Virus record (IMG/VR): IMGVR_UViG_3300032053_000002
Location: 62,001-126,000 of that record
Direction: 5' to 3' (one strand)
Length of the DNA: 64,000 nucleotides
Positions 17,919 through 17,995 of this stretch are shown here, in pieces. The notes beneath the pieces are model-generated. The model was not told the origin of the DNA. It did no database searches and saw only the letters and a list, made by a program, of their open reading frames with translations. How positions within the stretch are numbered: position 1 is the stretch's first letter; every line of letters starts with the position of its first letter. Made by a program: the position numbers and the translations under genes.

Positions 17919-17995
17919 TGGGCAAGATGAGATTTGAACTCACATTTTCAACCGTTACCTGAATCCCGCGTATCAGACGGGTGGGATACTTGCCC
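17919..17995 (-). tRNA. Non-cloverleaf tRNA-Ile-like RNA (GAT)
   Basis: GGGCAAG/CTTGCCC; no D-arm before CCCGT CT GAT AC GCGGG; ATTCAGGTAACGGTTGAAAAT then T-arm. Confidence 0.68.

What the first reader, a model, noticed from the sequence alone, without database searches (positions are those of the whole stretch)
17919..17995. Ile(GAU) version of the D-arm-less architecture
Seen: GGGCAAG/CTTGCCC-A acceptor, a 7-nt linker, CCCGT CT GAT AC GCGGG, then ATTC..GG..TGAAAAT and a T-arm. The order and the AT(T/C)C and GAAAA landmarks match the Arg variants, but the proximal pairing is less clear. The window has no canonical Ile-GAU tRNA, only this RNA and the Y-chimera. This suggests the fold is not limited to Arg.
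Basis: partly seen in the sequence, partly recalled or inferred. Interest (0 to 1): 0.65.

Follow-up and report, generated by a model that had tools for sequence, protein, structure and literature searches.

The report
Phage Ile tRNA with rewired D-arm
This 77-nt gene in a 293-kb sediment phage is very probably a working isoleucine tRNA from a widespread, so far unannotated class of phage Arg and Ile tRNAs in which the usual D-arm hairpin is replaced by pieces placed on both sides of the anticodon arm, a natural tRNA layout not described for bacteria or phages in the papers I could search.

Summary
Window 17919-17995 (minus strand) encodes a 77-nt RNA with a 7-bp acceptor stem, a 7-nt linker instead of a D-arm, an anticodon arm reading GAU, a 21-nt segment, a canonical T-arm and discriminator A.

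It is not a one-off. I collected 76 unique relatives from about 100 viral contigs, plus unannotated copies in cultured phages of Microbacterium, Rhizobium, Pseudomonas and Vibrio and in a crAss-like phage. All carry Arg or Ile anticodons. All three stems show abundant compensatory changes.

"D-arm-less" is only half right. Linker bases pair with bases just 3' of the anticodon arm, and the middle pair covaries C-G/G-C/A-U (100% paired in 76). This helix is followed by a D-loop-like U-A-R-N-(U)-G-G. The next base is A in 56/56 Arg members (the ArgRS A20 determinant) and U in 19/20 Ile members. A Levitt-type R15:Y48 covariation is present.

In phage tRNA arrays the odd tRNA replaces the canonical isoacceptor: canonical GAU occurs in 0/14 arrays with an odd GAU and 24/45 without. 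This phage has no canonical Arg or Ile-GAU tRNA.

The target's 5-bp "extra arm" is not conserved. Expression and charging are untested, since no RNA data exist.

The parts
17989..17995 (-). Acceptor stem 5' strand, RNA 1-7 (GGGCAAG)
   Evidence: Pairs 7/7 with 17920-17926. In alignment A2 all 7 acceptor pairs are 100% paired and all show changes on both sides.
17986..17988 (-). U8 A9 U10, the start of the linker. U8 and A9 are invariant in the class. By analogy with type A, U8.G47 and A9-U46 may form a short outer helix.
   Evidence: U8 and A9 are invariant in A1, A2 and A4. In type A, RNAalifold pairs 8:52 and 9:51 de novo and 10:50 covaries as GC 14 / AU 5. For the target's sub-type this is inference only.
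17982..17985 (-). C11 C12 C13 A14, the 5' strand of the nested D-stem equivalent (C11-G38, C12-G37, C13.A36 mismatch). A14 sits next to the anticodon stem.
   Evidence: Anchored counts on 76 unique members: linker(-4):pre[-1] is 99% paired (CG 74, AU 1); linker(-3):pre[-2] is 100% paired (CG 54, GC 19, AU 3) and is the top mutual-information pair at 1.03 bits. Slid registers are far worse.
17965..17981 (-). Anticodon arm, RNA 15-31: CCCGU / CUGAUAC / GCGGG. Anticodon GAU at 17972-17974, with C32, U33, A37 and C38.
   Evidence: 5 bp. All 5 pairs are 100% paired with changes on both sides in A2. A37 is present in 76/76 members.
17961..17964 (-). Connector A32 U33 U34 C35 between the anticodon stem and the 3' strand of the nested helix
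   Evidence: Variable in sequence, 3-5 nt across the class.
17958..17960 (-). A36 G37 G38, the 3' strand of the nested D-stem equivalent
   Evidence: Partner of 17983-17985.
17950..17957 (-). D-loop-like strand U39 A40 A41 C42 G43 G44 U45 U46, read as A14, R15, Y16/17, G18, G19, N20 and N21 equivalents
   Evidence: U-A-R...G-G is invariant even in members whose linker has no CC. The base after GG is A in 56/56 Arg members and U in 19/20 Ile members. R15 covaries with the base before the T stem. Other sediment samples carry a U inserted between C42 and G43, restoring the consensus UAACUGG.
17944..17949 (-). Variable-region equivalent G47 A48 A49 A50 A51 U52. U52 is the Y48-like partner of A41.
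   Evidence: This is where some Arg-ACG members carry an inserted, covarying hairpin, often with a GNRA loop. The Levitt-type statistics are A:U 67, G:C 5, G:G 2, A:C 2, permutation p<5e-5.
17927..17943 (-). T-arm, RNA 53-69: GUGAG / UUCAAAU / CUCAU
   Evidence: Canonical T-loop. The stem is 100% paired in A2. The natural variant 17927 A>G converts G53.U69 to G-C.
17919..17926 (-). Acceptor stem 3' strand (CUUGCCC) and discriminator A. No CCA is encoded.
   Evidence: The discriminator is A in 20/20 Ile members. No CCA-adding enzyme domain was found in the phage.
17834..17909 (-). Canonical tRNA-Lys(CUU), 9 nt downstream on the same strand; the target lies inside a tRNA array
   Evidence: ARAGORN and Rfam, 70.1 bits.
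15423..15502 (-). Sibling Arg-UCU (type A); ARAGORN miscalls it tRNA-Asp(atc)
   Evidence: (44.6 bits).
21000..21079 (-). Sibling Arg-UCG (type A)
   Evidence: (51.2 bits).
51018..51097 (-). Sibling Arg-CCU (type A)
   Evidence: (40.8 bits).

Best explanation
Window 17919-17995 (-) is a phage gene for an elongator tRNA-Ile(GAU) with a non-canonical but conserved architecture.

Shown: it has canonical acceptor, anticodon and T arms, and it belongs to a large phage family restricted to Arg and Ile anticodons.

Shown at family level, inferred for the target: there is no D hairpin between positions 9 and 26. Instead, the short 5' linker pairs with bases that lie 3' of the anticodon arm. This gives a D-stem equivalent that nests around, and probably stacks on, the anticodon stem. 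It is followed by a single-stranded U-A-R-N-(U)-G-G-N that looks like a D-loop (A14, R15, G18, G19, N20), and then by a short variable-region equivalent leading into the T-arm. In effect, canonical segment 10-21 has moved from 5' to 3' of the anticodon arm.

Inferred: the GG docks on the canonical T-loop and R15 pairs with Y48, so the molecule keeps an L-shape. It is cut out of the tRNA-array transcript and receives CCA from the host enzyme. Host IleRS charges it through G34-A35-U36, A37, A73, C4-G69 and C29-G41. It then reads AUU and AUC, which make up 45 per 1000 codons in this phage. In this phage it is the only Ile-GAU tRNA, just as its four siblings are the only Arg tRNAs.

Why phages use this layout is unknown. 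One possibility is escape from host factors that recognise a normal D-arm.
For: (1) Anatomy and Rfam tRNA match at 37.3 bits.

(2) Family: 76 unique members from viral contigs. The target scores 82.5 bits on model R1, against 32 bits or less for canonical tRNAs.

(3) Structure constraint: the acceptor, anticodon and T stems are 100% paired, 15 of 17 pairs change on both sides, and the covariation score is 0.845 against 0.22 for shuffles, with 0/500 shuffles reaching it. Type A gives the same picture.

(4) Nested helix: the middle pair is CG 54 / GC 19 / AU 3 with no exception, and it is the top mutual-information pair. RNAalifold finds it de novo in type A.

(5) D-loop likeness: GG is invariant; A follows GG in 56/56 Arg members and U in 19/20 Ile members; the discriminator is A in 20/20 Ile members. 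These match the bacterial identity sets in PMC9976931 Table 1. R15:Y48 covaries, p<5e-5.

(6) Use as the isoacceptor: a canonical GAU is present in 0/14 arrays that hold an odd GAU and in 24/45 that do not (p=0.0003). For ACG the figures are 2/43 and 6/16 (p=0.0035). The genome has no canonical Arg or Ile-GAU tRNA.

(7) Natural variants in other samples preserve or restore structure: U69>C makes a G-C pair, and a U insertion restores UAACUGG.

(8) The phage has no ArgRS or IleRS, so host enzymes must recognise these tRNAs.
Against: There is no expression, processing, modification or aminoacylation evidence. Only DNA metagenomes hold this phage.

In the target's own sub-type the nested helix is only two invariant C-G pairs followed by a C.A mismatch, and RNAalifold predicts nothing there. 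Part of that invariance was imposed by my search patterns (TATCCC and GGTAAC; GGTAAC). The covarying cases come from other sub-types found by the model.

The target can also form a competing local 5-bp hairpin.

C38 replaces the A38 determinant of E. coli tRNA-Ile.

A few phages (Zooman, L031) carry both a canonical and an odd Arg-ACG, so simple replacement is not the whole story.

The array comparisons use partial loci and sequences related by descent, so the p-values are optimistic.
Confidence: 0.7

Rival explanations
1. It is a truly D-arm-less tRNA with a long variable arm, as the first reader and the single-sequence MFE fold suggest. A 7-nt unpaired connector replaces the D-arm and UUCAG-GUAACGG-UUGAA forms an extra hairpin, giving a Y- or boomerang-shaped tRNA like mitochondrial tRNA-Ser(AGY).
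For: The MFE fold of the target shows this hairpin. RNAalifold on the target's sub-type leaves the linker unpaired. [quoted passage not shown]
Against: The hairpin is worth only -1.4 kcal/mol. It is absent from the other 19 Ile members, 11 of which have no local structure in that segment. Linker-to-downstream covariation exists across the family. The T-loop, the GG and the R15:Y48 covariation are retained, unlike in mitochondrial D-armless tRNAs.
Confidence: 0.12
2. It is a tRNA-like decoy or regulator rather than a decoder. It would mimic tRNA-Ile or tRNA-Arg to soak up a host tRNA-targeting nuclease or modifier, or another tRNA-binding factor, without being used on the ribosome.
For: The phage invests in tRNA defence and repair biology: an Rnl1-type ligase, an HD/kinase protein, Ro60 and a Y-like RNA. 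Some phages carry canonical and odd Arg-ACG side by side. Phage tRNAs are known counter-defence tools (PMC10264068 and PMC11464382, listed).
Against: The odd genes replace the canonical isoacceptor in arrays rather than duplicate it. This genome would otherwise encode no Arg tRNA while covering the other 19 amino acids. Synthetase identity nucleotides track the anticodon. The acceptor stem, discriminator and, in most members, an encoded CCA are kept.
Confidence: 0.12
3. It is a decayed tRNA pseudogene: a D-arm deletion plus an insertion in the variable region, with no function.
For: ARAGORN fails to call it and the Rfam score is low.
Against: The same layout recurs in about 100 contigs and in cultured phages of four bacterial phyla, with compensatory changes in every stem. 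Population variants preserve structure.
Confidence: 0.02

Closest known systems
Canonical bacterial and phage elongator tRNA (Rfam RF00005), specifically tRNA-Ile(GAU)
   Same: 7-bp acceptor stem with discriminator A73; 5-bp anticodon stem with a 7-nt loop (C32, U33, GAU, A37); canonical T-arm; U8 and A9; a GG motif; located in a phage tRNA array. It carries several E. coli Ile identity elements: A73, C4-G69, C29-G41, G34-A35-U36 and A37.
   Different: There is no D hairpin between positions 9 and 26. The D-stem equivalent is formed by strands on either side of the anticodon arm, and the D-loop-like strand lies 3' of that arm. It has C38 instead of A38. ARAGORN does not detect it.
Mitochondrial D-armless tRNAs, e.g. 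human or nematode mt-tRNA-Ser(AGY/UCU) (PMC9427863, PMC7609411)
   Same: A short connector sits where the D-arm normally is, with normal 5'-to-3' order of acceptor, anticodon and T elements.
   Different: Those are about 60-65 nt with a degenerate T-loop and no D/T elbow contact, are flexible, and need adapted organellar partners. This RNA is 77 nt, with a canonical T-loop, a conserved GG, R15:Y48-type covariation and a covarying helix involving the connector. It must work with ordinary bacterial enzymes.
Class II tRNAs (Leu, Ser, bacterial Tyr) with a long variable arm
   Same: Extra nucleotides lie between the anticodon arm and the T-arm. Some Arg-ACG members of the class carry a true inserted hairpin there.
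   Different: Class II tRNAs keep a normal D-arm, and their variable arm is a conserved hairpin. Here the segment is mostly single-stranded and D-loop-like, and the target's hairpin is not conserved.
Engineered D-arm-less 'mini HisT' used by evolved E. coli (PMC11551756)
   Same: It shows that bacterial aaRS, EF-Tu and the ribosome can use a tRNA without a D hairpin.
   Different: It is artificial, 62 nt, unstable, and has nothing replacing the D-domain. That paper states that all known bacterial tRNAs are cloverleaf and that natural armless tRNAs occur only in mitochondria.
Permuted tRNA genes (Cyanidioschyzon merolae) and allo-tRNAs (8/4 and 9/3 acceptor/T stems; PMC5389517)
   Same: Natural departures from the standard tRNA gene or cloverleaf layout, found by sequence mining.
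   Different: Permuted genes are re-circularised into a normal cloverleaf. Allo-tRNAs change stem lengths but keep all four arms in order. Here the mature RNA itself would have a different connectivity in the D-domain.

Membership tests
tRNA (Rfam RF00005 / cloverleaf) | Score at or above the curated gathering threshold over the full model | tested here: met
   37.3 bits against gathering score 29, model positions 1-71.
tRNA (Rfam RF00005 / cloverleaf) | 7-bp acceptor stem, 5-bp anticodon stem with a 7-nt loop (U33, R37), and 5-bp T stem with a T-loop | tested here: met
   The family alignment is 100% paired with compensatory changes.
tRNA (Rfam RF00005 / cloverleaf) | D-arm hairpin between positions 9 and 26 | tested here: not met
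   Only 7 nt lie between the acceptor and anticodon stems. Rfam aligns 15 model positions to 4 nt. ARAGORN makes no call.
tRNA (Rfam RF00005 / cloverleaf) | Expressed, CCA-tailed, aminoacylated and used in translation | not testable with these tools
   No RNA runs hold this phage. The only support is indirect, from anticodon complementarity in arrays.
Phage Arg/Ile tRNA class with a rewired D-domain (defined here) | High score on covariance model R1 built from class members | tested here: met
   82.5 bits, E about 1e-20; canonical tRNAs score 32 bits or less. The target was one of the 26 training sequences, so its own score is partly circular. The untrained members in cultured phages score 40-79 bits.
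Phage Arg/Ile tRNA class with a rewired D-domain (defined here) | U8-A9 linker of 7-8 nt whose last bases pair with the bases just 5' of U-A-R | tested here: inconclusive
   The target has C11-G38 and C12-G37, then a C13.A36 mismatch. Family-wide covariation supports the helix, but in the target's sub-type the two pairs never vary and RNAalifold does not call them.
Phage Arg/Ile tRNA class with a rewired D-domain (defined here) | U-A-R-N(1-3)-G-G motif 3' of the anticodon arm, with the next base tracking identity (A for Arg, U for Ile) | tested here: met
   The target reads UAACGG followed by UU. The class shows A in 56/56 Arg members and U in 19/20 Ile members.
Phage Arg/Ile tRNA class with a rewired D-domain (defined here) | R15-like base covaries with the base preceding the T stem | tested here: met
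   The target has A41 and U52. The class shows A:U 67, G:C 5, G:G 2, A:C 2, p<5e-5.
Mitochondrial-type D-armless tRNA | Short (about 60-65 nt), degenerate T-loop, D/T elbow contacts lost, organellar setting | tested here: not met
   77 nt, canonical UUCAAAU T-loop, conserved GG, in a phage genome.
Class II tRNA (long variable arm) | Normal D-arm plus a conserved variable stem-loop | tested here: not met
   There is no D-arm, and the local hairpin is not conserved among homologues.

The most novel reading that the evidence does not exclude
Phages of many bacterial phyla carry a natural, fully functional tRNA fold of their own. Its D-domain is topologically rewired, with canonical segment 10-21 moved to the 3' side of the anticodon arm. 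Host ArgRS and IleRS still charge it, through A20 or the anticodon and A73. Its identity has switched between Arg and Ile repeatedly through the one-step UCU-to-UAU change. It persists because it escapes host tRNA-targeting defences or other D-arm-dependent factors that act on normal tRNA-Arg and tRNA-Ile.
Probability: 0.25. Interest if true: 0.95.

Novelty: new variant of a known kind. Interest (0 to 1): 0.85.

Why it matters
[quoted passage not shown] The 2020 review of non-canonical tRNAs has no phage case.

If these RNAs are charged and used, they would be the first natural tRNAs working with ordinary bacterial translation machinery that lack a D hairpin. They would show an alternative way to build the tRNA core.

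They are missed or mis-called by standard annotation. ARAGORN makes no call or reports 'Asp-atc', and the copies in seven GenBank phage records sit in unannotated gaps. Phage tRNA inventories and codon-compensation or anti-defence analyses are therefore incomplete for Arg and Ile.

The strict A-versus-U rule after the GG gives a natural experiment on ArgRS and IleRS identity. The scaffold could also serve tRNA engineering.

Cultured hosts and phages are available, so the question can be tested directly.

Tried and rejected
1. Megablast of the tRNA array, and blastn of the target itself, against deposited phages found nothing. Only other class members gave hits.

2. A permissive Rfam scan did not reveal the Arg siblings. 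They came from my own scan for an acceptor stem plus T-arm.

3. Pairing of linker CC with the second GG is rejected. Members with linkers UAUCGGC or UAGCAGC have no CC but keep the GG.

4. A conserved extra-arm hairpin is rejected.

5. The MAFFT alignment of all types together (A1) put the 8-nt-linker members out of register, so I did not use it for counting. Model R1 aligns the type-A nested helix one base off, so I used an anchored alignment and a separate type-A alignment instead.

6. Expression could not be tested. Only 8 sediment DNA runs hold the phage and none is RNA.

7. Phage-encoded ArgRS, IleRS-type synthetase and CCA-adding enzyme domains were all absent.

8. The pattern scan of 596 Gb of prokaryote genomes gave 49 hits, of which only 3 are real. 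All 3 lie in tRNA arrays on Alphaproteobacteria MAG contigs, so there is no evidence that the class is a host tRNA type.

9. Model hits at 25-36 bits, including a Tyr-like one, are ordinary tRNAs that ARAGORN calls, so no identity beyond Arg and Ile was found.

10. The CUGAUAA at 19329-19335 is a promoter and ORF region, not a tRNA.

11. Seven literature searches and three papers gave no prior description. Subscription-only journals are not covered.

Full report
**What is there.** On the minus strand of window 17919-17995 lies a 77-nt RNA. It reads: G1-G7 acceptor strand; U8 A9 U10 C11 C12 C13 A14; anticodon arm CCCGU/CUGAUAC/GCGGG (anticodon GAU, with C32, U33, A37); A32 U33 U34 C35 A36 G37 G38 U39 A40 A41 C42 G43 G44 U45 U46 G47 A48 A49 A50 A51 U52; T-arm GUGAG/UUCAAAU/CUCAU; acceptor 3' strand; discriminator A77. 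No CCA is encoded.

Rfam's tRNA model matches it end to end at 37.3 bits (gathering score 29), but with the D-arm deleted and an 18-nt insertion before the T-arm. ARAGORN does not call it. It sits 9 nt upstream of a canonical tRNA-Lys(CUU), inside a large same-strand tRNA array.

**The genome.** The window is part of a 292,723-bp, 35% G+C IMG/VR virus record from sediment. The whole genome has 45 canonical tRNA calls plus a tmRNA. There is no canonical tRNA-Arg of any anticodon and no canonical tRNA-Ile(GAU).

A scan for an acceptor stem plus an adjacent T-arm found four siblings with the same layout, all with Arg anticodons:
- window 15423-15502, UCU (ARAGORN miscalls it 'Asp-atc')
- window 21000-21079, UCG
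- window 51018-51097, CCU
- genome 52815-52895, ACG

The five odd genes fill exactly the gaps in an otherwise complete tRNA set. The phage encodes no ArgRS, no IleRS-type synthetase and no CCA-adding enzyme.

**It is a family.** DNA-pattern scans of IMG/VR returned 7, 77 and 69 loci. A covariance model (R1) built from 26 clean members then separated members (about 36-95 bits; the target scores 82.5) from canonical tRNAs in the same loci (32 bits or less). It also found further members that the patterns had not required.

I ended with 76 unique sequences. Their anticodons are only Arg (ACG 32, UCU 17, UCG 4, CCU 3) and Ile (GAU 16, UAU 4). Neither an unbiased structural scan of 1.66 Mb of loci nor the sub-threshold model hits gave any other identity.

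In 596 Gb of prokaryote genomes the same pattern gave only three real members. All three are in tRNA arrays on Alphaproteobacteria MAG contigs.

Members also occur, unannotated, in deposited phage genomes:

| Phage | Anticodon | Bits |
|---|---|---|
| Microbacterium phage Zooman (between canonical Arg-ACG and Arg-CCG) | Arg-ACG | 78.1 |
| Microbacterium phage Zooman (second copy) | Arg-UCU | 77.2 |
| Microbacterium phage Pumpernickel | Arg-UCU | 79.0 |
| Rhizobium phage RHph_I1_18 | Arg-ACG | 72.8 |
| Pseudomonas phage HHBS10_2 | Arg-UCU | 65.4 |
| crAss-like phage cr130_1 | Ile-UAU | 50.7 |
| Vibrio phage vB_VpS_PG07 (T5-like) | Arg-ACG | 40.0 |

Partial blastn matches in unannotated DNA were also seen in Pseudomonas phages IME180 and vB_PaeM_Ty and in six other Vibrio phages; I did not score these with the model.

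**The fold is under selection.** On alignment A2 (type B, including the target) the acceptor, anticodon and T stems are 100% paired. Fifteen of the 17 pairs change on both sides. The covariation score is 0.845 against 0.22 for shuffles (0/500 reach it), and slid registers fall to about 0.1. Type A (alignment A4) gives 0.837 against 0.23.

In other sediment samples the target itself shows two variants. U69>C turns the G53.U69 wobble into G-C. A U inserted between C42 and G43 converts UAACGG into the family consensus UAACUGG.

**What replaces the D-arm.** Two sub-types exist:
- Type A: linker UARCCGAG, followed by ..UAUYCG-UAR-N-UGG-A-GYUG-AAAAU.
- Type B, including the target: linker UAUCCCN, followed by ..AAGG-UAAC-(U)GG-N...

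I anchored the linker on the anticodon stem and the downstream strand on U-A-R. On that alignment the linker base at -3 pairs with the base at -2 before UAR in all 76 sequences, as C-G 54, G-C 19 and A-U 3. The -4:-1 pair is C-G 74 and A-U 1. The next pair is Watson-Crick in a subset (C-G 11, G-C 6, A-U 5). Slid registers are much worse, and this is the top pair in an all-against-all mutual-information scan.

The informative cases cut across sub-types: UAUCGGC/ACCG (L043 Ile-UAU), UAGCAGC/ACUG (L148 Ile-GAU), UAUACCC/AGGU (L023 Ile-GAU), UACCACA/AGUG (L053 Arg-UCU), UAGCCCGU/ACGG (L148 Arg-UCG) and UAGCCCCA/AGGG (Pseudomonas phage).

In type A a second helix pairs U8-A9-R10-C11 with G-Y-U-G. 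Pair 10:50 is G-C 14 / A-U 5 and is 100% paired. RNAalifold finds both helices de novo. The 8-nt UAANUGGA is then a bulge between the two helices, on an arm that continues into the anticodon stem.

The GG is invariant even where the linker has no CC. That rules out linker-CC:GG pairing and leaves the GG free for a T-loop contact.

The third base of U-A-R covaries with the base just before the T stem: A:U 67, G:C 5, G:G 2, A:C 2, permutation p<5e-5, with no such relation in neighbouring columns. This is the pattern of the canonical R15:Y48 Levitt pair.

Some Arg-ACG members carry an inserted, covarying hairpin, often GNRA-capped, between the GG and the T-arm. That marks this stretch as the variable-region equivalent.

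Taken together, the RNA is not simply D-arm-less. The 5' strand of the D-stem and the D-loop appear to have moved to the 3' side of the anticodon arm, with the linker acting as the other D-stem strand.

**Caveat for the target.** In its sub-type the nested helix is just C11-G38 and C12-G37, followed by a C13.A36 mismatch. These pairs never vary, RNAalifold does not call them, and my search patterns fixed TATCCC and GGTAAC. The model is therefore carried over by homology from covarying relatives.

The target's MFE fold has a 5-bp UUCAG/UUGAA hairpin. It is worth only -1.4 kcal/mol and is not conserved. Eleven of the 20 Ile members have no local structure in that segment, and the rest have different weak ones.

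**Identity.** The base after the GG is A in 56/56 Arg members and U in 19/20 Ile members (UU in 15/20). The discriminator is A in 20/20 Ile members and U, G or A in Arg members. A37 is present in all 76.

Bacterial Arg identity rests mainly on A20, C35, U/G36 and A/G/U73. Bacterial Ile identity rests on A73, the anticodon, A37, A38, C4-G69, C29-G41, U12-A23 and the D-loop bases G16, U20 and U21 (PMC9976931, Table 1 and text). The target has A73, C4-G69, C29-G41, GAU, A37 and UU after the GG, but C38 rather than A38.

Within single structural sub-lineages, Arg-UCU and Ile-UAU members differ essentially at C35/A35 and at the post-GG base. For example, L060 reads ...GGGUAACUGG-A-UACAU and L023 reads ...GGGUAACUGG-U-UACAU. 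This suggests repeated Arg-to-Ile or Ile-to-Arg switching through the one-step UCU/UAU change, which may be why only these two identities use the scaffold. That is inference.

**Are they used as tRNAs?** There is no direct evidence, because no RNA run holds this phage. The indirect evidence is as follows. In arrays with at least 8 canonical tRNAs, only 4 of 75 odd-anticodon instances also have a canonical tRNA with the same anticodon. A canonical GAU is present in 0/14 arrays that have an odd GAU, against 24/45 that do not (Fisher p=0.0003). For ACG the figures are 2/43 against 6/16 (p=0.0035). These loci are partial and related by descent, so the p-values are optimistic. AUU plus AUC are 45 per 1000 codons in this phage, and AGA is 19 per 1000.

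**Context.** The window also encodes a Ro60/Rsr protein with a YrlA-like RNA nearby, an Rnl1-type RNA ligase, an HD plus kinase protein, a compact RNase P RNA-like element and an amber-suppressor tRNA. The phage is therefore heavily invested in tRNA biology. That fits, but does not show, a link to host tRNA-targeting defences.

**Known or new.** Seven full-text searches and three papers gave no description of such tRNAs. A 2024 paper states that all known bacterial tRNAs are cloverleaf and that natural armless tRNAs exist only in mitochondria. The 2020 review of non-canonical tRNAs does not mention phages. Subscription-only literature was not searchable.

I therefore rate this as a new variant of a known kind: a tRNA with a new core topology. 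The target is its Ile(GAU) representative.

**Verdict.** The label 'D-arm-less with an extra arm' should be replaced by 'rewired D-domain'.

My confidences are:

| Claim | Confidence |
|---|---|
| Genuine, conserved gene of this class | about 0.95 |
| Functions as tRNA-Ile | about 0.7-0.75 |
| The specific structural model holds for the target's sub-type | about 0.6 |

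Noticed in passing
window 46203-46452 (-): Compact RNase P RNA-like element. It matches bacterial class A RNase P (RF00010) over model positions 1-367 in only 250 nt, at 66 bits (below the gathering score of 100), E 7e-18. A phage-encoded, minimised RNase P RNA would be unusual and could relate to processing of the tRNA array.
   Followed up: no
window 1331-3019 (-) and about 4005-4125 (-): A Ro60/Rsr orthologue (TROVE plus Ro60 vWA domains, E 4e-59) with a weak YrlA-like Y RNA match nearby.
   Followed up: partly
window 36018-37193 (-) and 34108-35115 (-): A T4 Rnl1-type RNA ligase and an HD-phosphohydrolase plus AAA_33 kinase protein. Together they resemble a tRNA break-repair module of the kind phages use against anticodon nucleases.
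   Followed up: no
window 12629-12702 (-) and 19704-19779 (-): An amber-suppressor tRNA (anticodon CUA, which ARAGORN labels 'Pyl') and a tRNA with an 8-nt anticodon loop ('caga'). I did not examine possible stop-codon recoding or frameshift suppression.
   Followed up: no
window 15422-15502 (-); L003 1269-1349: ARAGORN mis-reads type-A Arg-UCU members as 'tRNA-Asp(atc)', taking the anticodon arm for a D-arm. Such calls in phage annotations may flag hidden members of this class.
   Followed up: yes
L203 2494-2569, L208 1464-1542 (Zooman); L207 1464-1541 (Pumpernickel); L202 2501-2578 (RHph_I1_18); L206 1464-1543 (HHBS10_2); L205 1470-1549 (vB_VpS_PG07); L204 1494-1571 (cr130_1): Class members in deposited phage genomes lie in unannotated gaps, or under a 'hypothetical protein' CDS in Zooman gene 160. 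In RHph_I1_18 the locus-tag numbering skips _035 at that spot.
   Followed up: yes
L002 1801-1894; L004 240-331; L006 4724-4809 and 8206-8291: Other phage tRNAs that are normally class I carry extra variable arms: Ile-UAU of 92-94 nt, Ile-GAU of 86 nt and Asn-GUU of 86 nt, all with normal D-arms.
   Followed up: no
window 49493-50995 (-) and 6758-7936 (-): A hybrid sensor histidine kinase (PAS, HisKA, HATPase and receiver domains) and a multi-PAS protein encoded by the phage.
   Followed up: no
genome 36140-36489 (-), outside the window; window 4432-4769 (-): A phage-encoded tmRNA with tag peptide GNYSLAYAA, and a manA-RNA-like match below threshold at 34 bits.
   Followed up: no
L180 1-2000 (Alphaproteobacteria MAG contig): A 17-tRNA array in 2 kb with canonical Arg-CCG, Arg-UCU and Arg-CCU, where only Arg-ACG is in the rewired form. 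It looks like a phage or mobile tRNA array binned into a bacterial MAG.
   Followed up: partly
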